This document shows positions 12,101 through 53,813 of a DNA stretch of 64,000 bases, piece by piece (the first letter of the stretch is position 1; each line of letters opens with the position of its first letter). The DNA comes from Laetmonice hystrix (lineage: Eukaryota): positions 5,890,001-5,954,000 of the forward strand of contig OZ249451.1 in assembly GCA_965235115.1 (NCBI GenBank), written 5' to 3'. Both the position numbers and the translations under genes were made by a program. The notes beneath the pieces were generated by a model. That model was not told where the DNA came from and did no database searches. It saw nothing but the letters and a program-made list of their open reading frames with translations.

Positions 12101-15100
12101 GGGATCCAAGGTCATGTAACGGGATCCAAGGTCATGTAACGGGATCCAAGGTCATGTAAAGGGATCCAAGGTCATGTAAAGGGATCCAAGGTCATGTATT
12201 GATAGTTTTCTCATGTATTTTCCAGGTTTCAGTATATACTGGGTGCACCTACTTCACCAGCCACTAAGATGAATGAGGAAACGTTGACTTACTTGAATCA
12301 AGGTAGGATGCATGTTCTCAATAAAAGAAAAGAAAATCTCTAGATTAATTGACTGTAACTGTTCATAATTAGATTTATTAACATGACTAATTGAGTTCTT
12401 TTTTTTTCTTTCAGGCCAGTCTTATGAAATCAAACTTAAAAGATATGGAGAAACCGCAGAGTACGGCAACATAAAGGTAAGTATTAAAGAGTTTATTTTT
12501 CAAATTTTAATTTTTCAGGGGTCGCACCTTTGTCATAGAATCCTCCAGGCCCGGTGTGAAATAAAGTTCGTTCCCCTATACAGTATTTGCAGTTGAATTT
12601 GGAAATACCACGGAATCAAATATAACAGAAATCCTAGCAAAAGAAGACTAAAAAGATACAGAGCATTATCCTGAATTGTAAGGCAAGGATTTAAGACCTT
12701 ATTGTCAATTTGTAATGAATGTTTTTTCAGAGTATTGTCCGAGTGGTGTTCCATGACCGCCGTCTCCAGTACATGGAGTTGGAGCAGCTCCAGTTGTGGA
12801 GACTGGGACGGCCCGGAGAACGATTACTTGACATTGGTTAGTACACCTTACACTGGTTATAGTCACACTCGTAATGCAGTGAGGGTGGCAGGGGTGTTAG
12901 GGTTAAGGTAATGAAATGAGATGGGTTTAGCAAAGTTAAACTTATTGAAAAATTTTCCGCAGTCTGACGAGTCACAAAACGTGTCGAGATTTTCTGAAGC
13001 GGTAATCCTGACTGTGGAAGCACTTGGTGCTGACAAAGCAGAATCAGAAACATCAAATGTCAAGATAATGCCAAGAAAGTATGACTAAGTACCATACTAA
13101 TATCAGGAATTGCCTGGGTGAAACAGACTGAGTCTAACTACGTAGTGTTTTTATTTTCACCGTAGATATACCTTTGTCATCCGGAATCACTGATGTCAAG
13201 GTCGAGTCCAACAAACTCAACTCGGTCTCGTTTCGATGGGACCAGAACAAGGACTGCAGTGTGTATGTGAAGGTAAGTCTTAATATATCGTTCTGATACA
13301 CCTCGTCAAACATGAGTATGAGTTCGGGATATGTGGTAGAAATACCCAGGACATAGAGAGTTATGTCAAGAGCACAGAATGAACTGAAGAAATTGGGTTT
13401 TGCCACATCCATTTTGAGATATTTTTGTGTGGTCTTGTTCTGAAGAAATACCAAACTTTTAATAATTGGAGAATTCTGGAGAGGATACAGCCTCGTTAAA
13501 ACCGTATTAAATAATTATTCAATCTTTCTGTGCCCATCGAACCTCTAATGTGAGGTATTGTAATTTGTGTACTAAAAAAACGCTGAGGGACCTCAAAACT
13601 GGGCTGGATTTTGTAATCTTTCATGTCCGTTTCTCAAGCCAGGGATTTTTCCAGATTCCTGCTTTTTCCGCCAAAAAATTTAACACTCAGTGACCGCTGT
13701 GAATCCGTTTTTTCTCCCTTACCTGATCACACCTGTGATTTCTTCCAGGTGCATTGCATAAGTACAGAATTTACAGCCAAGAAACATGGTGGAGAGAAAG
13801 GTGTGCCGTTCAGGGTACAGGTTGAGACTTATGTTGAGGAGGACGAAGACTCGCGTTTGGTACACTGTGCGTCATGTCAGGTCAAAGTGTTTAAGGTGAG
13901 TCAGAGAACAGTCAGTATAATGGTGAAATTTTGGTATTTTGTGCCACTGTTATATATTAGATGGTTCTTGTTAAACATATTTTCGTTCTTCCTTAATTGT
14001 TCAGTAGTACTTACATGTAAATAAACCATACGTCTAAATGTTGTTTATGTAGAGCCTTTAATTTTTAACATTTTTTTCTTTTCTTATTTCAGCCGAAGGG
14101 AGCAGACAGAAAACAGAAGACTGATAGAGATAAAATGGAAAAACGCTCAGGGTCAGAAAAGGTAAATTTTAATTATTTGTCAAAAAAGGTCAATTTTAGT
14201 TTGTCATAAAAGGTAGTTCATTACTCTGATCTATATAAGGAATTTTTGACGTTCTGACAGTAAAGAATTGTGTCTTTTGCATAAACCAACCGTATGTCTG
14301 ATTTTATGAAGATTGAGATGTCATTGCACATCCTATATTCCTGGCTCGCTGACAGTATCGGTGGAGCCGGGGACACAAGCTAGCTTAATTCACTGCCACA
14401 ATCGGTCACGATCATCAAATGATGCTATACCAGGGTAATACTTTTCAACAATTTTGGGATAATTCACTTTCAAAATATGCAGCAGTGTGCCCCCCCCCCC
14501 CCCACATGAAAAAGAAAGAAGGGTAAAAACATATGGAAATCGTGCAAATACACAGTGCAGAGAAAGTTCATGGTATATTAACCTAAGGGAAATTCCAAAG
14601 GAAACTTTCCAGTGCTTAGATAGAAACCTGTATGACGTTATCAGGTCAATGGACGGTTTATCACTCCTGGGGATACACGGGTCTGCAGGCTCCCTCTAGC
14701 GTCAATATAGCTAACTACCAGTTCCCCATTTTACATTTTCCTATATTGATCTTATTGTAATCATTTATCTTAATTTGAATTAATAGTTGGCAGTTGTAGA
14801 CACTTTAATGTTCCATTAATCACAGGTAAATCATACTTCGAGTCCAAACTTAACGTTTCTGTCATTCAAGGTTCCATCGTCAGGCTGATAAGATTGACTT
14901 TTGCCTCGTCTCACATAGATAAATCTTAACTTGTTGAACTTTATGAAAAGGCAATAATTTTACTAGGCTATTAGGTTCTGTTGGATACAATTTAAATAAA
15001 AAAGCCTTGTATAAAATCACCCTCCATAAAATCATAAAATTAGGACAGCACTGGCATAACATTGGTATGCATACATGTAGGTTTTGAAATTGTGAAAATT

Positions 15101-29785: not shown

Positions 29786-32700
29786 ATGGCCTCAAGGTCA
29801 GGTCCGAACACAAGTGACTTTATCATCCGGTGGTGTAGCAAATACGGCCTGTCCTACGACACCGCGCCTTTTCTGGCGTCAAAAGGTTTTACTAGCGCCA
29901 CACATATATACTCCCTGGGCCGTTAGCAGGTTGAAACACTTTCCATCCCCTTGGATCAACGGCAACTTTTACGCGGAGCGTTATTACAATTCAAAAAGAG
30001 TGACGCAAAGTTCGCCAAACGTCAGGCAAGGAAGAACACTTTGCCTCTCGAAGAGGTCCTGTTTGTAGGGAAGGACATTGAATTGGAAAGGTCACAACAG
30101 ATGCAAGCGTCTACGTCTAATATCGGTAGGCATTCGTCTGTTAGATTGACTACTAAAATATAAAGGGAAAACACGTGCATTCCCTTTGTTATACATATGT
30201 AACTACATCAAGTCTATTGATTCTTCGTCTTCTAAATGCCTGGGCATTCATCTAGATAAAATTTCCTGCATTAGGATGCCAAGTTTCTCGAATATCAATG
30301 GAGCCTATACTGTATAGATCTAGACACTATACTGCATGAGTTGCCAGTAAATTCAGGTGGAGAATCTGTCTTCAAAAAGCAAACCATTCCTTTCACGATG
30401 CCCCCCCCCCCCCCCCCCCCCCCATTCCACAAAACGCAGCTTTTCTGTTTGCAGCTCAAGAGAAGCCGCCTGAAGATGTTGCGCGCAGACGACGCCGACG
30501 AAAGCCTAGAGAGGATCGAGGCAACTCAACGGAAGGACAAACGCTGGCCGACCGTATCATGGGGCAGCGGGAAAATCGGAAACGGCAGCAGGTGCATGGC
30601 CTATTGATGCTAGTGACAGCAGAAGTTGTACACTGTACTAGTCTTTGAAGCAACATGCATATGCAGTGGCAAAACATTTGGGGGTTCCAACACTATTTCG
30701 CATTCATTTCATCGCGGAATTTATCACCTTCTGCATGTTTGCCCGAAAATTATATTCAAAAGAATGAGGCGATAAATATAGTCTAGGCTATGAAAGAAAA
30801 TAATAAAAATAAAAACAAGAAGAGAAAACACATTGATTAATGTACAATTGTACATCACTGGCAGAAAAACACAGAGGTCTATAATAGTACTCTTGAACGA
30901 ATCGCTAAAATTTGCACTGCATGGTGCCTCTCGCTGCCTTATCAGCCCTTACTTAATTACAGAATTTAGAGTAATACATGTATATTCGTTGCTCTCTAGC
31001 CAAAACCATCAGCGTCAAAAATTCGAACTGAGTCTAAATTATTAATGACCTGGCAGTGTGCGACTAGTCGATATATCTACTGGCTGTAATCAACGCCCCC
31101 CCCCCCCACCGTTCTCATATCTAAAGCTACAAGAAAGGTTTCTACTACAGGTAGAGTCGACTGAGTATATATCGAGAATATGTCTTCATGTTTGGGGTCC
31201 ACTCGTATTATTTCCTATCTGTTAGCGTCGATTTGTGAAAAACAATTTTTACTTCTCGGGGATGGTTTATCAATTCTCTAGAGAGATAGATATATAGACT
31301 CAGAGTTCGATTAAAGAGCGGGCCGATACAGCAAATAGCTGCTACGGTTTCACAACAAGCACACACATGTGAAGGTTGTAGGGAATGGGGCCTACTGCCA
31401 AGAGTTAAAACTAAATGTCATTACAGAACCTTTTTGGTACATTTCCTTGTGCACTAACAATGCCATCAGCTGGAAGGGACTTCTTTTTATATTATATCAT
31501 TCATTCATATTTCATGAGTGTCGGGCTATTTGTTATATATGCCCACTGATTATAAACGTATGGATAATTAAATGTTCTTGCAGTGAAATACTATACAGGG
31601 TGTCTCAAAAAAATGGTAATCCAAAAACAAAGGGCTTTTGTGACCAGCTATACGTAAATTTAGAGAAGATAAATGGCTGAATCATAAAGTATGGTTCATG
31701 AGCTTTCCAGTGACACCATCCTGACCTTCCTGTGGTCGCGCATTGCCGAACTGTGGGGTTTTAAAAATGGGACATCAGAATCCAAAATTTACAACTTGGG
31801 ATATGGTTGAAATTGACACCAAAACAACGCCAATCACCCGATCTTACCCCGTGCAACTTCTTTCTTTGGGGACATTTGAAAGACAGGGTATTCACCGATC
31901 CTCCTCGGGATATCGCAGAGTTACGGGCCCGAATCACCCACGAGGTGAACAACCTCCAAAACAACCCCGCAATGGTTAGAAGAGCTGTTCACGACATGCT
32001 TCGTCGCTGCAACCTTTGCCTCCAGAGAGGGGGTGGACATGTTGAAGGGGTTGGTCCGTGAATGATGGTGCAAGATTGTACCCGCATCAAATCTGGTTTA
32101 CGTAAAACTGGCACGCCTATGGCTGTTACATGTTCTGTAAATAAAATCTCTGACGAATCTTTGGCGTTGTTTTGGTGTCAATTTCAACCATATCCCAAGT
32201 TGTAAATTTTGGATTCTGATGTCCCATTTTTAAAACCCCACAGTTCGGCAATGCGCGACCACAGGAAGGTCAGGATGGTGTCACTGGAAAGCTCATGAAC
32301 CATACTTTATGATTCAGCCCTTTATCTTCTCTAAATTTACCTATAGCTGGTCACAAAAGCCCTTTGTTTTTGGATTACCATTTTTTTGAGACACCCTGTA
32401 GTAGGTCTGCAACATTGCCTTGTTACAGGCTTCAGCCAGTTCGATGTCACAGCTATCATTCTACTCAACGACATCCTGTTCAACATCCGAAGGCAGTGAG
32501 AATATGACGATGGATGGAGTGATAGGCCTACCAGTAGTATCTCGTAGACAAACTCAGCACGCGTCTCCATGGAGTGCACAGACAGAAACGACAGGTATGA
32601 ATTTGGAAGAACTCGTTCCTGAAGCGACAAAAGATGACGATGGCGGAGCATGGAAGAAAGGCAAAGTCCCCGAAGACGATCTCGAGTTTAAAACGAGCCC

Positions 32701-33004
32701 GGCAGGAAAAGCGACGTTTACTGGCTTACCGTCCCTCCAGGGGGAAGTATTTACTCAAACCGATTCGCCAGTGCTCAATACGATGAGCAGTGATGAAATT
32801 GACCAATTAGAGAAGGCATTAGATCAGAACCTCCATGATATACTGACAGGTTTCAAAGAAAAACACCCAATGGACGACTTTAAAACTCGGTCGAAAGACC
32901 TCCAAAGAGCCCACGAGATTTTAGAAAACGAACTGTTCAATGCAAAAGACAAACTCATCATTAAAAAAATAGATCGTTCCAGAACGTGCGAGGAAATGAA
33001 ATAG
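29786..33004 (+). pseudogene. Three-exon gene for an N-terminal SAM-like-domain protein (about 350 aa if the stop is read as sense), interrupted by TAG at 29924-26
   Basis: ATG 29786 in strong context (AACATGG). Exons 29786-30125 (phase 1, GTAGGC), 30455-30591 (phase 1 in, 0 out, weaker GTGCAT donor) and 32429-33004 (phase 0) join in frame. FIIRWCSKYGLSYDTAPFLASKGFTSATHIYSLGR*QVETLSIPLDQRQLLRGALLQF follows the SAM hydrophobic pattern across the stop. Confidence 0.62.
31596..32398 (+). mobile_element. Young non-autonomous Tc1/mariner (ITm) deletion derivative, 803 bp
   Basis: TA target duplication (31594-95 and 32399-400). 238-bp TIRs (31596-31833, 32161-32398) begin CAGGGTGTCTCAAAA, with only 2 mismatches seen. 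The interior keeps only the transposase C-terminus SPDLTPCNFFLWGHLKDRVF...GGHVE, with N at the third catalytic D position. Confidence 0.95.
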
Positions 33005-33734
33005 CTTGCACCATGAGACATTCACATTGAGATCTAGACAACTCAGCCTATTCCGTATGTACCATAATCGGCCAGCTTTCAGGCAGGCCTCGGCTGTGAA
33101 TCTCTCCGTCGAAAGGGTTCATTTTTAGACAGCACGCATTCTCCGCAGCAAACGTTCTATTGCCGGTGTTCGTCAAAACATTATACAACTCCGCCTTTTG
33201 ACCACGTCGCTCCAGTTGCAGGATATGTTCTTTGTGGGGGCCCACCCCAATGAAAACACGGTCGAAATGCAGCAGCGCCTACTGGCGGAGATTGTGAGAA
33301 ACTTGAATTAAACACGTACTGTATGCATCCACTGACATTTTAACATGGCCTATTGGGGCGGGGGGGGGGGTGAAGCCTATTAAAAACCACCCACTTTTTT
33401 TCATTAGGGGGGGTTGCAACCCCCCACCCCCACCCCCGGTTCCGCCGCCTGCTGAAAACTGCTGACAGGATTAGCAGTCACACGACAGATGCATACCGGC
33501 CGATCAGCGCTTGTTTGCACCACTGCCACAAGGGGGATACATACATAGCTCTATGAAACAAGGGGCAGTGCGATGGGTGTTCATCACTGAGTTGGATTTT
33601 TATTTTGCCTGAAACATTAATATGACAAATAGACGACTATTATTTAATTCTCGGACTCTCCAGCTATAGACAACCAATGCCGATATAGATAATTATTTAT
33701 AGCGGGTTCGTTGTTTTGACCTCGGAGCGACATT

Positions 33735-35540
33735 TCACCGCCATATCCCACCCAAGACTTTCCTGATAATGAAAAGCCACTGTGAGCGTCTTTCCTGTCC
33801 ATGGAAATATCTTCCCGATCTGACATCCTCGTAGTTTATTTTCAAATTAATCATTCTGCCGTAATAGCGGAGGTAGGTGGCGCCCCCGTCGCTGTGTAAG
33901 CCGCTTAACGTCATGGACCTTTTGAAGAACGCGTTTACGAAGATCAACAGAGCTTTCTCGTACAACTCGCTCTCGTCGCTCGTTCGTTTATATGATGTTC
34001 CATTTTCATTAATCTTAGATAGCACAGAATCGTCATGCCGAGAGAAAACTCCGCATTTGCGAGCTATCGCTATTGCGTAGAATATTCTTGATATCTTCAG
34101 ACGGTTTTTATTTTCGAATGCTATGCTACGTCTTGATGACGTCAGCATTCGATGAGCTATCACAGTGTCTTGCTCGTAGAACTGGCGAAGGTTAAATGCA
34201 ATGTCCTTGACCATACGGGTCAACCTCTCGACAGTGACATTTACGTCCCGGTTCGAATAGACACTACTTACTTTCAGAACATTGAATCCCGGGACGAAAA
34301 AGCTGGACACTTTTCTAACCAGCAGTGCTTGTGAAAGGATATCGAAGATTTCTATTGTCCTTACTGCAATGTTGCCATCTCCCTCCCAGCTGCAGTCGTT
34401 CGGATATTTCACGACTAGATAGAACCAAATAGTTTTTAGCCAATATGTTGGAACCACGTTGGCCATTTGACAAGTGGAACTGTTGTAATCAGACATTATG
34501 TACAAATTGCGTATCATCTTAGCTATTCGCAAGACTCGTTTCTTTGGAAGGCTTATCGCGCGTTCTAAGATGTGACGTTCTTCAACTGATGACGTCACTC
34601 GCGCCATTGTCCTCCCTGGCGTTGTCATGATGACACGTACCGTGTTTATATCATTCTCTGCGACTTGGTTTTGAGAAATCTTCATCGCGGAAGATTCCTT
34701 GTCATGGTCATCAACTAGTCTGGGCCCGAGATAGAAATGTTCCCAACTGATTGGCCGCTCATGTGAGGCGCAGAACCGTGATGGTAGTATTTGGAACGGT
34801 ATTGTCAAGACAACATCTACACAAACCTTCAGTGATTTATATTTGGCACCATTCCATATGAGCGTGTAGGTGAACACTTTTCCATAATCTGCAGACACTT
34901 TCTGAATGACACTCAAAGGGGACCATTGCCACCCCTCCTGCAGTACAGCCTTCAGTGCGTCTCCTATGGCATCGAATATACAGCGAAACCACACACTGCG
35001 GAGGGACACCGAGTACCGAGATTTCTTAGCAACATCTTTATGAAAAACAGGGAAAAGATCTTTAAATATATCTTCATTTACCACTTCATACAGTACTGAG
35101 AAGCAGGAGTCATTCCTAATGTCATGAATCTCCAATTTTGTGTTCTCTTCATCCGCGAGGACTGGCAGATCTATCATGAAGTCGAACTCATCTGGGGCGC
35201 CAAGTTTTAAACCTTCGTAACTACTTCCCGTCTTAAGCAGACGACACTCTTTGAAAAGTTGTAATTTTCCCGCCAAAATTTCACAGGCGTTTTCCATCAT
35301 TGCCTCAAGACTTCGGAATATACGCTCCTTTTCTTGAGTTTCTAGCATTTCGCATTTTTCCTCTAATTTGCGAAGGAATCGGCTGAATCTTTTCCCAGGT
35401 TGAGCAGATGAACTTCCAGATTCGGAGCTGCTGTATCGTCTGTTTTGTGCGTCTCTAGCTGCGTTTGTCGTCAGCGTCCAGTCAGTAAGGGGGGACGGCG
35501 GGCGCGTGTAGCACTTATCTCTCCAACCTGTAAATACCAT
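33735..35540 (-). CDS. cGAS-like receptor (cGLR; Mab-21/cGAS nucleotidyltransferase family), 601 aa, single ORF
   Basis: TGSSYEGLKLGAPDEFDFMI (GS plus E-x-D), third Asp in VCVDVVLTIP, and helical-bundle motifs TYWLKTIWFYL and SSFFVPGFNVL. There is no vertebrate cGAS zinc thumb before KKRVLRIAK. An in-frame TAA lies 2 codons upstream of the ATG, and AATAAA on - at 33599-33604. An upstream exon via TTTACAG near 35530 cannot be excluded. Confidence 0.93.
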   Translation of the reverse strand: MVFTGWRDKCYTRPPSPLTDWTLTTNAARDAQNRRYSSSESGSSSAQPGKRFSRFLRKLEEKCEMLETQEKERIFRSLEAMMENACEILAGKLQLFKECRLLKTGSSYEGLKLGAPDEFDFMIDLPVLADEENTKLEIHDIRNDSCFSVLYEVVNEDIFKDLFPVFHKDVAKKSRYSVSLRSVWFRCIFDAIGDALKAVLQEGWQWSPLSVIQKVSADYGKVFTYTLIWNGAKYKSLKVCVDVVLTIPFQILPSRFCASHERPISWEHFYLGPRLVDDHDKESSAMKISQNQVAENDINTVRVIMTTPGRTMARVTSSVEERHILERAISLPKKRVLRIAKMIRNLYIMSDYNSSTCQMANVVPTYWLKTIWFYLVVKYPNDCSWEGDGNIAVRTIEIFDILSQALLVRKVSSFFVPGFNVLKVSSVYSNRDVNVTVERLTRMVKDIAFNLRQFYEQDTVIAHRMLTSSRRSIAFENKNRLKISRIFYAIAIARKCGVFSRHDDSVLSKINENGTSYKRTSDESELYEKALLIFVNAFFKRSMTLSGLHSDGGATYLRYYGRMINLKINYEDVRSGRYFHGQERRSQWLFIIRKVLGGIWR

Positions 35541-37192
35541 AATTTACCGCGTGTACATACGCCGTGGCCATGTAGATCTATAACTGGAAAGTCATTTTCT
35601 AAGCCAAAATCAGAGAGGGCTGGAATTAATCTTTAAGAAGTCATATTTAGAACAATATACGGTAGACGAGGTGTACAAGGAGGACTAAAGGATGTAGATA
35701 TATAAAAACTTGCGTCTATAGAATAAATTTTATACGACTATACGCTCAAGGTGACCATTGTCAACCCTCCGATCGAAACAAATGTAGCGCAACGCTGGGC
35801 TTTCTAATGGGACCTCAATCTACCGAGCCCGGCCTTGGAAGTACTCAGTTATTTACATGTGCATGCACTACTTTCTGAACTCTGGCAGGCGTGCGGTGAA
35901 GGGTGACAGATTTTCTGCTATGTGAGTGTACTATACTTACACACACGAATCCCGTTATGTTTGTGAACGGAGCAGACTTCCTCATCAGTTCTTGTCATGT
36001 TGGCAGTTTGTAATGTTATAATGGAACGGCAGTCAGTCTGTGAGGAATAGACTAGAGTCTATGTACGACAAGATCTTTCAAACAATAGGCCCATGCCCTA
36101 AAGAAGCACGTAATGCTTTCCTCTCGGGGTTAAGTTTTTAGGTCGTCACTCAGACGGCTATAGTGCATGGCCGGATCCAGGTCGGCGTCAGAAGGGAGGG
36201 GGGTTAGTGAATGTTTCAGTTGAAATTTGGACAAGCTACAAAATATATTTTTTAAATCGCAATCTGTCGCTATAAACTGTTACAAATGTCAAATCCCAGT
36301 CCGGTTGAGACGATGGGATAAAGGGAAATCCACCGAATTCGGATAAAAATAGTTTGTATACCGACGACTGACCTTTGGACAATCGATCGTTCGTATCCTT
36401 CTCGTCTTGCACACGTTGTGCTCCAGGGTTTTAATCGCCACGGGGAAACCCTCTGTGGTCGATCTAGATCTATAGGCCTAATTAGGCGGTAACACAGGAA
36501 TAGGGCTAACTGGAAATCAACTCGATGTTGTCACTATAGGCGTACTATAGATGTGAACACGTGAACCTATGGGACGTCGTTTTTATTGTGAATGGACGGA
36601 CAAGGTTATGGCAGAGTGCGTGAGTCACATGGGGATCCAGATCACGTCCCACATCCGCCTTCATGAATGAGTGTTCACTTCCAGCTTAGCTAAAGGCTGA
36701 GAATCCCAACGCGAGTTCCCGGTTCACCCAGCGTCAATAGTTGACGTCATGCAGACCTGCCAACTCCCCCGCGTCATGATTGAGAGGGAGAATACATTTC
36801 AGACCTTTCTCTAGCTTGGTTCCCGCCTCCCGTGTAGGTCGCGGAACAAGGCTAACCTTTCTCCCGCTCTTTGGCCACTATATGAAGGGGGGGGGGGCAA
36901 ACGTACCTGTTTAAGAGCCTTATTTTTAACCCTCCGAAGAGGCAGTGACGTCTAATTCGCCCCCGTGAGTCCGTCCGCAGGGCCGGATCCAGCATTTTTT
37001 CAAGGGGGGGGGGGGGGGGGTTGCCGTCGCCTAGTCCGAAATTATCATTATTATATGAAATAGATCTCTATAACGTTAGGCTATTTATCGCTTTAGATTC
37101 TAGATTCACACTGCACGGTTCCTGGGCTGGAGGACGAACATTTGACACCTTTGTTTTCCGTACCTTTTGAACTCAAACAAAACAAGACAACC

Positions 37193-37886
37193 CGATTTCT
37201 TTCAAATTTGGTGCAAAGAAGGCGCAAATGAGGGCCAATGTATAGATCTAGAACAATGTATTCTCAGTTCAAAACAAATATGGCGACATGGTGGCCAAAT
37301 TGTTGTGGTTTTTTTTGGGCGGTTCAAATGACAGATAGGAAGTCATGAAGTTTTGTTTGGTGCCATTTTCCATGACCTTCAGCGACCTTGAAAGGTCAAT
37401 CAAGTGCATGCATATTTGCAATGGCCTGTATCTCTAAAACAGTTGAAGAAACATTCCACAATGATCAGGGACAGTCATAAGGATGACACAGATCAAACAT
37501 AATTTTGATATCATTCAAAATGGCCACTTGGTGGCCATCTTGGATTTAACACATTTTGAGCGATAATTGGGCCTACTCAGATAAAACAATCCCGAAATCT
37601 TCCACTTATTTTTTGCAAAAAAAGGAGCATATGAGGGGCAATGTGCCTTGTATAGGCCTATAGTGACATGGCGGCCATATTTATCTTGTGAGGTCAATCA
37701 ATTCAAGTTCTGGGACATTTTCGATGAATTATACAGATGCCTAAAAAGATGACCACTTAGGCCTACTAACAATAATGGATGAAAACATATATGAAGTTTC
37801 TTTGTGACTCATATATCAGGGATGTTCTTACATGGACTGTAAAAAAAATACAAAGTACTATAATAGTTCCTAGACCCACAAATAAT
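37193..37886 (+). mobile_element. Truncated, diverged copy of the HINE family at 18629-20194
   Basis: Shared blocks CGATTTCTTTCAAATTTGGTG, AAATATGGCGACA, CATGACCTT..CGACCTTGAAAGGTCAATCAAG, CAAAATGGCC..GGTGGCCATCTTGGATTT and GACCCACA.ATAATT in the same order. Confidence 0.8.
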
Positions 37887-38108: not shown

Positions 38109-38278
38109 GAGAATCTGGCTTGCCATTGGTCCAAGTTTTATCCCTAGGGGCAGCATTGAGAATCTGGCAAGCCCTCGGGGTCTCCGCTAGGGGGCCAAGC
38201 GTTCAGCGGTGGACGTGAACCAGCGGGAGAATCTGGCGTGCCATTGTTCCCAGTTTTGTCGCTAGGGGCAGCACTGGA
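38109..38278. repeat. Three imperfect direct repeats GAGAATCTGGC...CTAGGGG(G)C
   Basis: Units start at 38109, 38158 and 38227. Units 1 and 3 are similar over about 50 bp. Confidence 0.8.
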
Positions 38279-41197
38279 TCAGACAATATACAAATATGGC
38301 ACTTGGTTGAGTACAATATGAAAATTTATGGCACGATGGCAACTGATATTGCACGATACCAAGTGCCATATTTGTTTTATTTTATGACTGCCGCACTTTT
38401 CCTGTGTATGCCAGGACCCATCGACGACTGCACAGTCAGTTTAACTTTACTCCATAAGACTCATCATCTAGACCTAGGCCTACCGGTAGGCCTATGCTGA
38501 GCCTCAGTGCGTCAGTACTCACAATTCTACCAGTAAACCATGATCAAAACCATGACCAATTAACAATCAGTCACCACATAAACTTCTCATGTCGGGAAAT
38601 TAGATAGGCTACAGGGATCCATCGTGTTCACGACTGCTTTAGCTAGGCTAGAGCTAGCCTAGCTAGAGGCTATAACTCAGCCTCGCGTAGTTTCCGCTTT
38701 GCTATCATACGCTGTCACCCCCAGGCTGTTCTATTAAACTTACGTTAAGAATGCCTAGGAGCCTATTTGCACGAGGAGGGGGTGAAAACACTTGACGGCA
38801 ACGCAAAAGTAATATTGACTGGTCAATATTACTTTTTCCGTGCAATATTAGTTTTTATCTGTGATAACGTGACAGGGAACTGACCAATCAGGACAGGGAA
38901 AGTGCGGCAGCCATAAAATAACATCTATTATTGAACCCAGTCTGAGGAATCAATTGATAAAAATCAAGAAAGTTAAAATAGTGCTTGAACGAATTGGCAG
39001 GGGAGCATTTCCACAAAATTGGGCCTACTAATCTTAGTTTGTCTTCATGTATAACTTCGTCGGCTAATAATAATGTCTGTGTTCTCGGCCTACGGCCTGC
39101 GAAGAGTCCTAAATTCAAATGGAACCAGAAAAGATGGTGCAAAAAAAGTTCATTCTGATCAAACGAGTCTACACTCTCCCTGGTGGACCCACCAAGGAGA
39201 ACATTGTTGGGGTTTGCAAGTTAATAATAAATAGCTAAATAAATAGTTTTTTTTTTATAAAGAAAAATTATATAGCGCTACATTATATTCCTCTCCTCGT
39301 TTCCAAATAAATCATGTCAACCCATTGTCTCCTTGCCACCATATGCAGCGTTATTTTGGCTTTGTGATGTGCTCAGTTTGATATTCCAAGCGTTTTTATC
39401 AACCCAATAAACGGTCTATGATATCTCTGTCGCAGTCAATTGTCAATATGAATGAGGTCAGCCGGGTCCAATGCTTGCTTTGGGAGGTAAATGCCCCACA
39501 AGTATAGGGAGTCGACGATAGCGTCTGTCGGTTGCCAAGCAAAGAACAGTTCAGCTTCGGTTTTCTAAGCCTGGTGGTCAGAACGCAGGTGATTTGTCCA
39601 CCTGCGTTCTCCGCCCACGCTTTCAATATCGGTGGGTCCGCCATGACACGAATAGCGTGGAGGTCGCTTGTCACGAGGTGCTAACTTCCGAGAAGTCGGG
39701 ACATCGGCCGAGTTGGCGTTTGTCACACAAAGACCTGTGCTGTGCCGTTTTCCGGTATTTTGGAGTCCCTATAACATTTCACCAATCCGTTCCACGATTT
39801 TTAGCCGACAGCGCCGTGCGTCGCATTCACCGCACATCTCGACGTTCTCCACGCGTTGCCACGTGGTAGTGAGAGTTCGGTATGACCTGTGGTAACTCCG
39901 TAATTTGGCGACCACAGGGAGTGCACATCAACAATATAGAGACTTTGCTGCTAGGTACAACACACGCTTGGCTTCAGACACTTCACAGGAAGTGAGAGGA
40001 GGGGGAGGGGGCACGAGTGTAATATTACAACTCGAATCCGAGATGACATTCGGACACCTTTATCAACATGGCACCTGGAAATCATTGAAAAGGATAATAA
40101 AAATAAGTCAGTAAATAAAGAAATCGCATATCATCACCCCAAACAGAAACTCAGTGAAAGAAGTAAACCATTAAACATAGGCGTATGTGGTATACCGTTA
40201 TGATTATATGCTATGATTACAGAGGCCTATAACGCCTGATTTAATTAAGGTATATTTAATGAGTTTTCCGGGAAAGGCAAGATTGAAAAGTAATGGCGGG
40301 GAGGGGGGGGGGGTCAAAAATTGAGCTCTTCAGAAGCTGACGCGAATTACGCAAGATGCACATAGGCCTATAATAAAAAAAAGGAAACCTATAATAAAAA
40401 AAGAAGCCATATCCTTTTCCGTTTAAGTGTGATCTGCTAGGATATAAAATTGTAATTTTTTTTATAAAATTGTTATTTTTTTTATGAACAGAATCACTAT
40501 GAATTTCAAAATTGTAAACTATTTCTTCAATACCATCTTATCGGTTTCGCAGTCGTGTTTCAATGTCAGACGGCAACCCAACCGCTTCTAATTGCCCTAC
40601 CATTAATTATAACTATAAAATACAGATTCTGCCAAAGAAATTCTTCTTCGCAGAGAGTGCCAAATTGATGGCCCTGACTATAAGCAAAAATGTGTGTCGC
40701 TTTGACAGAATTAGAAGTTGCAATGGCTGGGAAGCAATGACAACTGACTTTCATCTCATCTTCACCGCCGTGATATGACCCTGGCTGTTGCAAGGCGTAA
40801 AACCCCAAATACCCTACCCTACCCCCCCAACAGTTATAATGATGTTTGGTTTATATCTCTCCTGCACGTTTGTTATACACGGGAGCTGCACAAGGAACAT
40901 TTCCCCCTGCATGCATGCATATATCTTCTCCAGATTATGGAAAGATTACAGATCGATCGGGCAGGTGTTCAAGGATAATTCCAGCTACATTTCTGGCTGA
41001 CAAGTGACCATTGACCTCAGGGCAGCAAGTGCATTCAAACACGGCATGCACTAGTTCTACTATAGTTGGGCTGGTCGGTATAATATACATGTACTATATA
41101 ATTAGTGATGTGCAACTGTATATCTTGACATCTTGCCCCTGAAATGTCGTACGACTTCAGATAACGGTTCAGCCGTAACTCGAGGTCGACAGAGAGA

Positions 41198-49861: not shown

Positions 49862-52800
49862 TCAGTTTGCCCGCTGTCGCTTAGCGTCATACGTTTTCAT
49901 TCTGTCCTCTCTGCCAGCCTCCCACTTCTCCAGGTCATTGGCCTGGAGAAGTATTCTCATCACCTCTCGCATCATACGGTCACAGTCCCCGAACACACGA
50001 CATCCAAGGGGAGACCGCGTCCTTGGGTCTAACTTCTCACACGTCTTGTCCAGGTGAGTGCTTTGTCTGCCCAAAACAAAAGACAAACTCCTTGGTTTCT
50101 TAATACTCTTACGTGAAAACCTAAGTTATGACTGGGAGTGGAAATAAATGACAAAGCATCAAACAATGACATTAAAAATACAAAAATTTCTTATGTGAAT
50201 TTATCATATAGAACAAGTTGCCGTAATGCTATGACACAAATTGTTATCTAGGAATGTCTGTGAATATATAACTATATATATGGCCTACAAATGAATATAA
50301 TGTACAACATGTATACATATATGTAAATGATTTACATATAGAGACCTGCTGCAATGAAATAAAATTACCTGTTGCATATAACAATTCGAAGTGGTCGTTT
50401 ACCCATTTCAACAAGCTCATTGGCCGGCGTGACAGTGAGAGTGGTCCCTAGACATAACATGAGATCGCACGCCTGGCTCTCTGTCACGGCACGGTCGTAT
50501 ATAATGTCCTCCAGATTGTCACGGAAATTAATGATGGTATCCATCAGAAAGCCCTTACAGCCCTGTCAATCAAAAAATTATATTATTTACTTTAGCAATG
50601 GAGACCAAGAGTCCTTACTCACTTGTTAGAAAAAAACTGAAATATAATTTTGCAATGAAGCCCATTGGTATTGTTCTTATTATTATAAAATCTAAAAGAT
50701 TGAAAATCATGTTTTGACACAGGCCTACCTTTTCTTCACACTTCCTCCCAGTCCGGTGACTGAGCCGACACAGATCACACTGTTTGGCATTCCGAGGTTT
50801 CAAAATATCCGTCTTTCCATTGTCCTCCAGCTCCTCAAAGTACAGACTGGCATGGTCGTCGAGGACATAATATGAACGCTCATACCTTTCTGAACATTTC
50901 TCACACTTCTCCAGGAAAACATTGCCATGAAGTTCAGAGATTTTCTCCCCCATGATACCTGCAAGTTTTATACAGTTTTTTTTTTAGTTGGCTCGACTTT
51001 ATTTGGTATTGTCAATTGATGAGGTTTTACAGTCATATATATGGGCAGATATTCTGCAAGCGAGCATTTTCTAAATTTGGGAAAGGGTCATCGTTTTGGC
51101 TGAAAATAAAGTTTCTCAGATGCCTTCAGTACTGGTATGACACACATTTCAGGCACGTCTTTTATTCACATCATGTGAGAAAGACTCCTCTGTGCTCTCA
51201 CTAAATTGTTTCAAAATTTTCAGCAATTTTGGTCTTCAGTGAAAGTGATTGCTAACTGGTTTTGAAGTGTCTGCCAATGAAACCCGACTACAAAGGCTAC
51301 CAGACCCTGACTCAGAGCGACTCCCCAATAGGACGGTCAAGGAAATGATGTCCTACATGAAAATCTATCAAAGCAACAATGAGTACAGCCCATTGTGTAG
51401 AACTGATTACATAGAAAATATTTGTAATACGATCTACTACTTGTAAGTGCAGCAGATACTTACCAGCCAGAGTATGAAGGCCATCCCCATTTTGACTGAT
51501 TACATATTTCAAAAGTCCCATTTCCATCAACTTTGTCAGGGCCTCATGGGTGTAGGTTGGCCGAAGGGACTCGTATGGTACTCCCTCCTCTCCCACCTCG
51601 TCTTTCTTCTCTGGAATCAAGCTATATATACTCACATCTGTATACAAGGTTCAAACTTAAAGTACTATACATATTGATATTTTTTATATTTGCATGAGAC
51701 GGTCATGTTTCAAGGTGTGGGGCATGTGTTCTTTTTTTTACCATCTTCCACAGACTCCTGTGTGCTGAATCTCCTGCGTTTGGCGGGAGATACGTCCACT
51801 TCCTCCCGGCAGGCCATGCAGTCCATATCCACTGCTTCACGATCCTCTGACGTCCATTTCCCACTCTTGCCCCTAAAATCACAATTTTTTTTAATTAATG
51901 TTTTAGATTATGATGAAAACTGCACTTTTGTCAAAATAAACAGTAGAAAATAAACAGGTTGCGCAGCAAATTTCACCAAAAAAATTCAAGCACTTTTCAA
52001 TACCATTTTCTCGAATTTCCAGTACATGCACGCGGCAAAATCTGAGCTTGTATGGTCAATTAATAGGACTGTATTTGACATTAGTCACTGCAGATATGTT
52101 TCTTGTTCATACAATACTTTTTGTGCAAAAATAAAATGACGGAGAATAGCCGACGGCAGTTGCGAGCAGTCAAATTCCCTAAGAATTTGAGACTATATCA
52201 TACCCCAATTTCGTTACTGCCTCCCTCCCACCAAATTCAGGGATAAAATACAGGAATTCAAGCACTTTTCAAGCCAGGCCTGAAAATTCAAGCACTTTTC
52301 AAGTCGCTGCGCACCCTGATAAAAACATGTACATTTATAGCGCGCAGCGCGCGCCGCCGAAGGCGGCGCCGCGAAGCGCTGTTATGGCAACGTACGTAGA
52401 TCTTCTCAACCTCTGCCCGATCCACCAAGCCAACAACTTAAACCGGATGGTAACCGGACCGCAGTCCATGCACGGCGCCATCTTGAATGTCCGAGTTGCG
52501 GGATTTTCTCGATTGTGATTGGTCGAAAAAAATGTCAATTAATGAGAAACTCGTAAAGAATGCAAAAATATTCCAGCTATAGCCTAATTAAATTATGGCT
52601 CCAATGACTGAAGGAGAAATATGGGATCTATACTTTCACCAGCCGATCGCTGTCTGTAAACTACTTTGGCTTGTGCGATTCTCAAAACTAGTTCCCTCAA
52701 ATCCCGCTATGCGCCGCCAGCGCTGAAAGCCCACTTCCGCCGACTGGGACTTCCGGTGTCAACATCCAGTACGACACACCGCCGCTTTGTTTCCGAGTAT

Positions 52801-53813
52801 GATCGTCGGGCTCGATTGGGCTATAGATAGAGTTAGGATTAGTTAAGGTTAGGGTTAGCTCTCAATCATTTCTGTCTGATGAATAGATATTCATACTAGT
52901 CTACCTGTGATCGTTAGGCCGCAGTACCAATCCTTGGACGTAGTCGTTAGAGTTTAACATCCACCTACCACAGCACTAGTGGCGCTACCACACGCTGCGC
53001 GCTCCCTATGTCCCCGACATTTCATATTACTATATCATCTAGTTTTTTTAACAGGATTTTTAGCAGTAGGCTTAATATGCTAACCTGTAGTCTCCTATGC
53101 CTGCTGATGTAGATATACCCGCTCCTGTAAAACAAACACAATGCTCCGATGATCTTATAAGTTCAGCAACCAGCCGACCCTTCTCTCTGATCTCTTTCCA
53201 AGAATCGTGTCTCTCGGCTGTTTCCGACGCCTCTTTGACCATTTCCTTCTCTGTGGCTAACATGGTTCCGGTTTTCTTCCTTCCAGACCGTGTCATCTTC
53301 AGTACATCTTCCCAACAGGCCACATGGAAGCTAGCATCTCCATTTTTAGTCCATGACACAATCAACTTTGCCTTGATTTTTTTCAGTGCAGCTTTGCTGG
53401 GCATCACAGTGCAAACATCGACCCTGGCCACGTCTGGAGGTAAGGGCCCCTGGTGGCACTCACGGTAACTGCATCTCTCAGACTATTAAAACAAGTGAAC
53501 ACATTTTCAGAGTAATTTGTGCAAAGGGGGAAGGCAAGCCCCCCCCCCCCCTTCCTAGTCCAGGAACCACCTACTACCTAGTCCTAGACTCTTGCTTGTT
53601 GAGTACCCCCCCCCCCCCCCCCCATCAATCAATCAACAATGCACTATCAGTGCCACTGATATGGACTGCCACTGCATTGGACTACCAGTCACAACACGAG
53701 ACATCATTACAAGGATTGATTTCACAGTAACAGTGGCTAGAAAAAGTCTTTTAAACTTCAGACGGATCCAAGCTTCTAGTTTATGTACTCACCCCACTTG
53801 TATTCGCCGCCAT
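49862..53813 (-). CDS. Divergent class IV (SIRT6/SIRT7-related) NAD-dependent deacylase with a putative N-terminal zinc finger, 441 aa
   Basis: Seven phase-consistent coding exons on -: 53813-53793, 53482-53085, 51872-51742, 51610-51464, 50958-50729, 50562-50369, 50066-49862 (1326 nt). Motifs FTGAGISTSAGIGDYRG, LRPTYTHEAL, ISQNGDGLH, ELHGNVFLEKCEKC, TGRKCEEKGC, DTIINF, LGTTLTVTPA and VICNRQ. Confidence 0.93.
51955..52318. mobile_element. hAT-like MITE in sirtuin intron
   Basis: CAGGTTGCGCAGC pairs with GCTGCGCACCCTG (12/13), and there are three internal copies of AATTCAAGCACTTTTCAA. An 8-bp target duplication is not cleanly seen. Confidence 0.6.

What the first reader, a model, noticed from the sequence alone, without database searches (positions are those of the whole stretch)
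33735..35540. Intronless cGAS-like receptor with intact catalytic residues in an accessory block
Seen: a 601-codon uninterrupted ORF in a genome whose other genes here have many introns. It has GSSYEG...DEFD and VDV acidic residues, a Ser-rich N-terminus, a long spine helix and no zinc thumb. Established: animal cGLRs are pattern receptors making cyclic dinucleotides that activate STING, and ligands and products vary by family. Inference: an active, probably uncharacterised innate sensor that arose by retroposition or recent duplication. No STING gene is visible in this window.
Basis: partly seen in the sequence, partly recalled or inferred. Interest (0 to 1): 0.8.

Follow-up and report, generated by a model that had tools for sequence, protein, structure and literature searches.

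The report
Single-exon cGAS-like receptor, old orphan subfamily
This is a real, intact gene for a divergent cGAS-like innate immune enzyme in a marine-invertebrate-type (spiralian) genome, but its lack of introns is normal for this old gene family, so it is an ordinary new member and not a recent retrocopy.

Summary
Window 33735-35540 (minus strand) is an uninterrupted 601-codon ORF. It encodes a Mab-21/cGAS-fold nucleotidyltransferase with every catalytic position present: G105-S106, E118, D120, D242, R314, K341, Y366 and K369. It has no zinc thumb.

It does not group with the enzymatically silent MAB21L genes. The genome's own MAB21L is elsewhere (contig 4). STING genes exist on contig 10.

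The origin story is not supported:
- The gene is the only member of its subfamily in this 627-Mb genome; the nearest paralogue is 24% identical.
- There is no poly(A) remnant after the gene.
- Subfamily members in corals, oysters and a 52%-identical relative are also single-exon.
- 20 of the 28 Mab-21 loci in this genome sit in open frames of at least 500 aa.

The subfamily (anthozoans plus spiralians) is defined by a 120-170-aa C-terminal module with no known fold. It occurs in only 12 clusters among 1.84 billion representative proteins. Its Nematostella member was already catalogued and cloned by Li et al. 2023 and is not among the 15 enzymes they labelled active.

Expression, ligand and product remain untested; no RNA data were found. 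Verdict: a new member of a known kind, of modest interest.

The parts
33735..35540 (-). Complete single-exon coding sequence, 601 codons plus stop (33735-37)
   Evidence: still an intact ORF in the other haplotype or individual: no indel or stop among the variants listed (11 further variants were not listed)
35364..35540 (-). Residues 1-59: basic (pI 10.9, net +7), Ser-rich, predicted disordered N-terminal tail
   Evidence: weak similarity of residues 13-35 to the N-terminus of the Nematostella member
34233..35363 (-). Residues 60-436: cGAS/cGLR-fold core (spine helix, NTase lobe, helix bundle)
   Evidence: Foldseek to Sp-cGLR1 and cGAS, E about 1e-9, TM by target 0.60-0.69; Pocillopora cGLR E 1.7e-13 over residues 53-457; family profile against PDB: Sp-cGLR1 5e-21, cGAS about 1e-18
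35181..35228 (-). G105-S106 ... E118-F-D120: GS loop and the first two metal-binding acidic residues
   Evidence: invariant in 30 family members; aligns to the GS..EFD stretch of cGAS
34815..34817 (-). D242: third catalytic acidic residue (VDV)
   Evidence: invariant in the family; aligns with D of other cGLR paralogues and with Q169 of MAB21L; lies in predicted strand 237-250
34578..34601 (-). R314-V-T-S-S-V-E-E321: counterpart of the cGAS 'RLSFS..E' nucleotide-contact motif
   Evidence: R314 and E321 invariant; aligned to Sp-cGLR1 and cGAS
34242..34541 (-). Mab-21_C (HhH/H2TH-like) domain, residues 334-433, including K341 and the Y366-W-L-K369-T motif
   Evidence: Pfam PF20266, E 1.4e-8, 35.2 bits against a cut-off of 24.1
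33738..34232 (-). Residues 437-601: subfamily-specific C-terminal module (long helical hairpin, helix, three short strands); strongly basic here (net +14)
   Evidence: structure prediction; 12 clusters only, always C-terminal to Mab-21; no family or fold match; charge
33599..33648 (-). Candidate poly(A) signals (ATTAAA, AATAAA) 90-140 nt after the stop; no A-tract follows
   Evidence: read directly from the sequence; inference only, no RNA data

Best explanation
The ORF is a functional, single-copy, single-exon gene for a divergent cGAS-like receptor (cGLR; Mab-21 superfamily nucleotidyltransferase). It belongs to an old subfamily shared by anthozoan cnidarians and spiralians. That subfamily has an intact catalytic set, an NTase lobe with a longer spacer before the third acidic residue, no zinc thumb, and a private C-terminal helical module. 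By analogy with characterised cGLRs, an unknown ligand on the face behind the active site should switch on synthesis of a cyclic (oligo)nucleotide. That product would be read by one of the STING proteins encoded on contig 10. Shown here: gene integrity, fold, residue conservation, subfamily placement, ancestral lack of introns, and presence of STING. Inferred: catalysis, ligand, product and the STING link. The lack of introns is inherited from the subfamily ancestor and is not a recent retrocopy event.
For: ORF intact and far beyond chance. It stays open in a second haplotype or individual: no indel or stop among the listed variants. Fold matches Sp-cGLR1, cGAS and Pd-cGLR. The family profile scores Sp-cGLR1 at 5e-21 and cGAS at about 1e-18, against MAB21L1 at 3e-8 and MB21D2 at 8e-3. 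G105, S106, E118, D120, D242, R314, E321, K341, Y366 and K369 are invariant across 30 members at 22-52% identity. D242 aligns with the catalytic D of paralogues and with Q of MAB21L. In the tree the window protein pairs with P0001 (SH-aLRT 100) inside the subfamily clade (98). None of 25 other own-genome loci falls in that clade, and MAB21L is separate. Single-ORF members: P0001, coral-type P0003 and P0005. The Ostrea member has residues 47-717 in one exon. At least 3 STING ligand-binding-domain loci exist in the genome. The Nematostella member XP_001629304.1 (26% identity, E 8e-40) is listed as a cGLR and was cloned for the screen in Li et al. 2023, PMC9980059.
Against: No RNA run exists for this organism, so transcription is unshown. 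The Pfam NTase domain is below its cut-off for this protein (17.9 against 24.1 bits). The AF2 model is only moderate (pLDDT 66), and active-site geometry could not be inspected. Polymorphism gives no proof of constraint: 12 nonsynonymous against 6 synonymous changes, pN/pS 0.56, p=0.18. One allele carries G110D at a family-invariant glycine. The Nematostella member carries no active-enzyme label in Table S3 of Li et al., so no member of the subfamily has a demonstrated product. The window + P0001 lineage sits on a long branch.
Confidence: 0.65

Rival explanations
1. One reading: a recent retrocopy or recent duplicate sitting in a dispensable (accessory) block.
For: The gene is intronless among multi-exon neighbours. 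Transposon debris and high-copy repeats lie nearby: a mariner-like fragment at 31807-32061 and repeats at 36737-37721.
Against: No paralogue exceeds 24% identity in the genome, and none is in its clade. There is no A-tract after the candidate poly(A) signals. There are no flanking direct repeats beyond G-runs. Subfamily members in coral-type and oyster genomes and the 52% relative are single-exon too. 20 of the 28 Mab-21 loci in this genome lie in open frames of at least 500 aa. The gene has ordinary depth in the resequenced sample.
Confidence: 0.05
2. A cGLR-fold protein that keeps catalytic-looking residues but acts mainly without cyclic-nucleotide/STING signalling, for example as a scaffold or kinase activator, or with another product or receptor.
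For: Human MB21D2 has a complete motif yet remains an orphan, and many cGLRs were inactive in vitro (PMC9980059). The abstract of PMC12928593 reports shrimp Mab21 proteins acting outside the canonical nucleic-acid sensing paradigm. The private C-terminal module suggests extra interactions. The Nematostella member is not among the labelled active enzymes.
Against: Ten active-site positions are invariant across cnidarian-to-spiralian divergence. That is hard to explain without catalysis.
Confidence: 0.22
3. A gene drifting towards loss: unexpressed or under relaxed constraint in this lineage.
For: pN/pS of 0.56 is not significantly below 1. SNP density in the ORF (about 1.0%) matches the 3' flank (about 1.1%). 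There is a G110D allele, a long branch and no RNA evidence.
Against: 601 codons remain open in the reference, and no indel or stop appears among the listed variants of the other haplotype, whereas the 1.1-kb flank carries four indels. All invariant family residues are retained in the reference. The 52%-identical relative is also open over at least 530 codons.
Confidence: 0.08

Closest known systems
Nematostella vectensis XP_001629304.1 (LOC5508727; UniProt A7SGB3), a catalogued but uncharacterised cGLR in Li et al. 2023 (PMC9980059)
   Same: Same subfamily: 26% identity over 476 aa (E 8e-40), the same catalytic residues, the same long spacer (about 121 against 119 residues), and the same C-terminal module (profile E 6.9e-13). 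It falls inside the same clade.
   Different: The Nematostella N-terminus is about 20 residues longer. The window protein's C-terminal module is longer (165 aa) and strongly basic, whereas most members of the subfamily are acidic. The pairwise BLAST alignment itself ends inside the module.
Pocillopora damicornis Pd-cGLR (A0A3M6TIF0 / XP_027049992.1), reported as auto-active, acidic and making 2'3'-cGAMP (PMC9980059)
   Same: Best structural match among reviewed proteins (E 1.7e-13, residues 53-457). It has the cGLR fold and no zinc thumb. Most members of the window's subfamily are acidic like it (pI about 5).
   Different: Only 18% identity. It is 432 aa with no C-terminal module. The window protein is basic overall (pI 9.3).
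Stylophora pistillata Sp-cGLR1 (PDB 8gjy), a dsRNA-activated 3'3'-cUA synthase
   Same: Top PDB match by both profile (5e-21) and fold. It shares the GS..PDEFD and R.SFS..E motifs.
   Different: About 13% identity in the structural alignment. It is 376 aa and lacks the C-terminal module.
Vertebrate cGAS
   Same: Fold, catalytic triad, basic disordered N-terminal tail and spine helix.
   Different: No H(X5)CC(X6)C zinc thumb. The spacer to the third Asp is 119 residues, against about 90. It carries an extra C-terminal module. It is single-exon. It is not an orthologue.
MAB21L1/2 (developmental, no demonstrated enzymatic activity)
   Same: Mab-21 superfamily, and also single-exon.
   Different: MAB21L has N-G / E.E / Q where this protein has G-S / E.D / D. 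The genome's true MAB21L is at contig 4:8.62 Mb and is 79-89% identical to animal MAB21L proteins. The two are separate in the tree.

Membership tests
cGAS-like receptors (cGLR), criteria of Li et al. 2023 (PMC9980059) | Active-site motif h[QT]GS-X8-20-[DE]h[DE]h-X50-90-h[DE]h | tested here: met
   T104-G-S106, then 11 residues, then E118-F-D120-F, then V-D242-V. All are invariant in 30 members. Caveat: the spacer to the true third acid is 119 residues (family range 110-130), longer than the X50-90 search window. The authors' own catalogue includes the Nematostella member with a spacer of about 121, so the spacer length is a search heuristic and not a defining feature.
cGAS-like receptors (cGLR) | Homology over both the NTase core and the C-terminal helix bundle | tested here: met
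   Mab-21_C is above the cut-off. The NTase domain is weak for this protein, but 28 of 30 family members hit it (best 2.2e-11). The profile matches both stretches of Sp-cGLR1 and cGAS.
cGAS-like receptors (cGLR) | Predicted structural homology to known cGLR/CD-NTase enzymes | tested here: met
   The AF2 model matches 8gjy, cGAS and Pd-cGLR with TM by target 0.60-0.69 and E 1e-9 to 1e-13. Model confidence is moderate.
cGAS-like receptors (cGLR) | [quoted passage not shown] | not testable with these tools
   This needs recombinant protein and TLC or LC-MS.
cGAS-like receptors (cGLR) | A STING receptor encoded in the same genome | tested here: met
   PF15009 exons above the cut-off lie at contig 10:17.214-17.216 Mb, 17.223-17.225 Mb and 5.942 Mb.
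Vertebrate-type cGAS | Zinc thumb H(X5)CC(X6)C between the RLSFS motif and K414 | tested here: not met
   Only about 20 residues lie between E321 and K341, with one His and no Cys.
MAB21L-type (enzymatically silent) proteins | N-G in place of G-S, Q in place of the third Asp, and very high conservation across animals | tested here: not met
   Alignment and tree. The own-genome MAB21L lies elsewhere.
Processed retrogene | Intron-bearing parent gene, poly(A) remnant, target-site duplications, and intron loss relative to orthologues | tested here: not met
   There is no parent gene, no A-tract and no flanking repeats. Relatives are single-exon as well.

The most novel reading that the evidence does not exclude
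The private C-terminal module (residues 437-601) could be a new ligand-sensing or regulatory domain of this cGLR subfamily. Its charge flips from about -18 in coral-type members to +14 here (+7 in P0001), and this protein also has a basic N-terminal tail. Together these would mark a lineage-specific switch of ligand class, for example from a cationic non-nucleic-acid ligand to a nucleic acid.
Probability: 0.15. Interest if true: 0.55.

Novelty: new member of a known kind. Interest (0 to 1): 0.3.

Why it matters
The finding adds one intact member to a small cGLR subfamily that spans cnidarians and spiralians and has no known ligand or product. It also shows that single-exon structure is the norm for cGLR genes in this genome, so lack of introns should not be read as retroposition here. 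The subfamily's unexplained C-terminal module and its charge reversal give a concrete construct pair (full-length against residues 1-436) for anyone screening orphan cGLRs. Otherwise this is an expected part of the known cGLR radiation in marine invertebrates.

Tried and rejected
- Expression: both sequencing-run searches found only three runs of one sample. Laying them showed flat depth of about 50x over gene and flanks, so they are DNA and say nothing about expression.
- C-terminal module identity: no Pfam family. Protein-atlas features scored at most 0.78. The best VIA-align Z was 7.1, on the helical hairpin only. AFDB clusters gave E of at least 0.65. No fold could be assigned.
- C-terminal module self-association: complex prediction gave no verdict (score 0.00, partner pLDDT 33-34). 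This is not evidence either way.
- hhalign of the family against MAB21L aligned only the Mab-21_C part, so D242 was placed with a MAFFT alignment instead.
- DNA of the 52% relative could not be fetched because the sample file is too large, so dN/dS and synteny were not possible.
- The Oculina P0002 and P0006 loci are not on record.
- A tree with characterised cGLR sequences was not possible, because no tool returns those sequences as usable ids. Profile and fold rankings were used instead.
- The bacterial promoter/terminator scan is irrelevant for a eukaryote.
- A contig joint 37022->33419 in run X2 was considered as a possible deletion allele. It was rejected because it falls on inverted poly-G/C runs and depth shows no hemizygosity.

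Full report
**Observation**

The ORF listing returns one ORF of 601 aa at 33735-35540 on the minus strand. It is by far the longest in the 64-kb window; the next longest is 223 aa. With this window's base composition, the expected number of open frames this long is about 3e-12. The frame closes two codons upstream of the ATG, which has A at -3 and G at +4.

The neighbouring genes are indeed split. One ORF at 13.6-14.0 kb covers only positions 151-202 of the 223-position CP2 domain. One at 51.3-51.6 kb covers positions 58-96 of the 180-position SIR2 domain.

**What it is**

- **Pfam:** Mab-21_C scores above its cut-off (E 1.4e-8). The Mab-21 NTase domain scores below its cut-off.
- **PDB by sequence:** the best hits are cGAS chains, matching through the GS..EFD stretch and the Mab-21_C stretch.
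- **Database homologues:** a search found 35 relatives. One is 52% identical (P0001, an ENA assembly). The rest are 20-35% identical over their aligned parts and include Oculina patagonica, Ostrea edulis and Saccostrea cucullata. Later look-ups added Desmophyllum pertusum and Nematostella vectensis XP_001629304.1.
- **Family profile against PDB:** a profile of 30 members hits Sp-cGLR1 (8gjy) at 5e-21 and cGAS at about 1e-18. MAB21L1 scores only 3e-8 and MB21D2 8e-3.
- **Structure:** an AF2 model built on that alignment has pLDDT 66 and pTM 0.67. It matches Sp-cGLR1 and many cGAS structures with TM by target 0.60-0.69. Among reviewed proteins it is closest to the Pocillopora damicornis cGLR (E 1.7e-13, residues 53-457).

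**Catalytic residues**

G105, S106, E118, D120, D242, R314, E321, K341, Y366 and K369 are invariant across the 30 members. In a MAFFT alignment with the genome's other Mab-21 proteins and with MAB21L orthologues:
- D242 falls in the column that holds D in most paralogues and Q169 in MAB21L.
- G-S falls where MAB21L has N-G.

The spacer between the second and third acidic residue is 119 residues (family range 110-130). That is longer than the X50-90 window of the published search motif. The Nematostella member has a similar spacer and was nonetheless accepted in that catalogue.

There is no room and no Cys cluster for a zinc thumb between E321 and K341.

**Not MAB21L-type**

The genome's true MAB21L is a 359-aa single-exon gene on contig 4. 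It is 79-89% identical to MAB21L proteins from abalone, octopus, annelid, nemertean and vertebrates. This also places the genome among spiralians. In a maximum-likelihood tree, MAB21L forms its own group, well away from the window protein.

**Origin**

- **No close copy:** the whole-genome protein search finds only the gene itself. The nearest of 27 other Mab-21 loci is 24% identical.
- **Tree placement:** the window protein pairs with P0001 (SH-aLRT 100) inside a clade (98) made only of the foreign subfamily members. None of the 25 other own-genome loci in the tree joins that clade. So it is the sole representative of an old subfamily, not a recent duplicate.
- **Single-exon relatives:** P0001 is a 1593-bp uninterrupted gene. 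Coral-type P0003 (659 aa) and P0005 (690 aa) are uninterrupted in megabase-scale contigs. The Ostrea edulis member has residues 47-717 in one exon behind a single small 5' exon.
- **Single-exon paralogues:** within this genome, 20 of 28 Mab-21_C matches lie in open frames of at least 500 aa. All ten that were scanned carry both Mab-21 domains in that one frame.
- **No retrocopy marks:** no A-tract follows the candidate poly(A) signals. No flanking direct repeats exist beyond G-runs.

The lack of introns is therefore ancestral.

The gene and the 1.2 kb upstream of it are single-copy by depth. High-copy repeats begin at 36.7 kb.

**The C-terminal module**

Residues 437-601 are predicted as a long helical hairpin, a further helix and three short strands. 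A profile of this part finds only 12 clusters among 1.84 billion representative proteins. Apart from one 82-residue fragment, the module sits at the C-terminal end of proteins of 452-737 aa. It has no Pfam family, no atlas match and no structural match.

Most members of the subfamily are acidic (pI about 5). The window protein and P0001 are basic (pI 9.3). The module carries net +14 here, against about -18 in the coral-type members. Li et al. associate pI above 8.5 with nucleic-acid-sensing cGLRs and very acidic cGLRs with unknown, possibly cationic, ligands. The core itself is near neutral here (pI 6.4), so any ligand inference is weak.

**State in the population**

The only public runs are DNA from one sample. 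Their contigs differ from the reference at 18 listed positions in the ORF, 6 synonymous and 12 nonsynonymous. No indel or stop appears among the listed variants; one search left 11 further variants unlisted. The 1.1-kb 3' flank carries 12 SNPs and 4 indels.

pN/pS is 0.56 and is not significantly below 1 (p=0.18). One heterozygous change is G110D, at a glycine that is invariant in the subfamily. Other cGLRs have H or R at that position.

**Pathway context**

STING ligand-binding-domain exons lie at three places on contig 10, two of them in tandem.

**Literature**

Li et al. 2023 (PMC9980059) catalogued more than 3,000 cGLRs, with radiations in cnidarians and bivalves, and screened 140 of them. 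XP_001629304.1, a member of this subfamily, appears in their domain table and in their list of cloned genes. It carries none of the labels given to the 15 active enzymes that were analysed in depth. So the subfamily is known as a sequence class, but it is biochemically an orphan.

**Verdict**

This is a real and probably functional cGLR gene. It is a new member of a known kind, with an ordinary explanation for its lack of introns. Catalysis, ligand, product and expression are inferred, not shown.

Noticed in passing
window 32420-33004 (+) and 29786-33004: A 194-aa ORF converges on the 3' end of the cGLR gene. It has no Pfam hit. Another first-stage note (s1-327628) calls this region a SAM-like gene with an internal TAG.
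   Followed up: no
window 31807-32061 (+): An 84-aa ORF that, by reading, looks like the C-terminal part of a mariner/Tc1 transposase. It has no Pfam hit at E 0.01.
   Followed up: partly
window 36737-37721 and 38116-38500: High-copy repeats, 100-1000 times the single-copy depth in all three DNA runs. Diverged copies (about 75% identity) lie at 18.7-19.8 kb of the window.
   Followed up: partly
window 35212 (codon 110): Heterozygous C>T giving G110D at a subfamily-invariant glycine next to the GS loop. It is seen in contigs of runs X1 and X3 but not X2, all from the same sample.
   Followed up: partly
window 13623-14024 (+); 50615-53431 (-): Exons of a CP2/grainyhead-type transcription factor gene and of a sirtuin (SIR2) gene. 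Both are multi-exon.
   Followed up: partly
G000 contig 30: 11.514-11.577 Mb (L010-L013, L029): A tandem array of five near-identical single-exon Mab-21 genes (785-790 aa; one open frame of 597 aa). This is a recent local amplification, unlike the window gene.
   Followed up: partly
G000 loci L004, L007, L015, L019, L023 (contigs 18, 8, 21, 29, 18): Single-exon Mab-21 proteins with TPR-like matches in their C-terminal extensions. L004, L015 and L023 each have a TPR family near or above the Pfam cut-off; L007 and L019 have only sub-threshold hits. Open frames on contig 8 reach 1403 and 1658 aa.
   Followed up: partly
G000 contig 10: 17.214-17.225 Mb and 5.942 Mb: Two tandem multi-exon STING genes and a third STING ligand-binding-domain exon.
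   Followed up: no
window 33416-33436 and 37004-37024: Inverted G/C-run arms flank the gene. A contig joint in run X2 (37022->33419) falls on them. This is most likely a low-complexity assembly link and not a deletion allele.
   Followed up: partly
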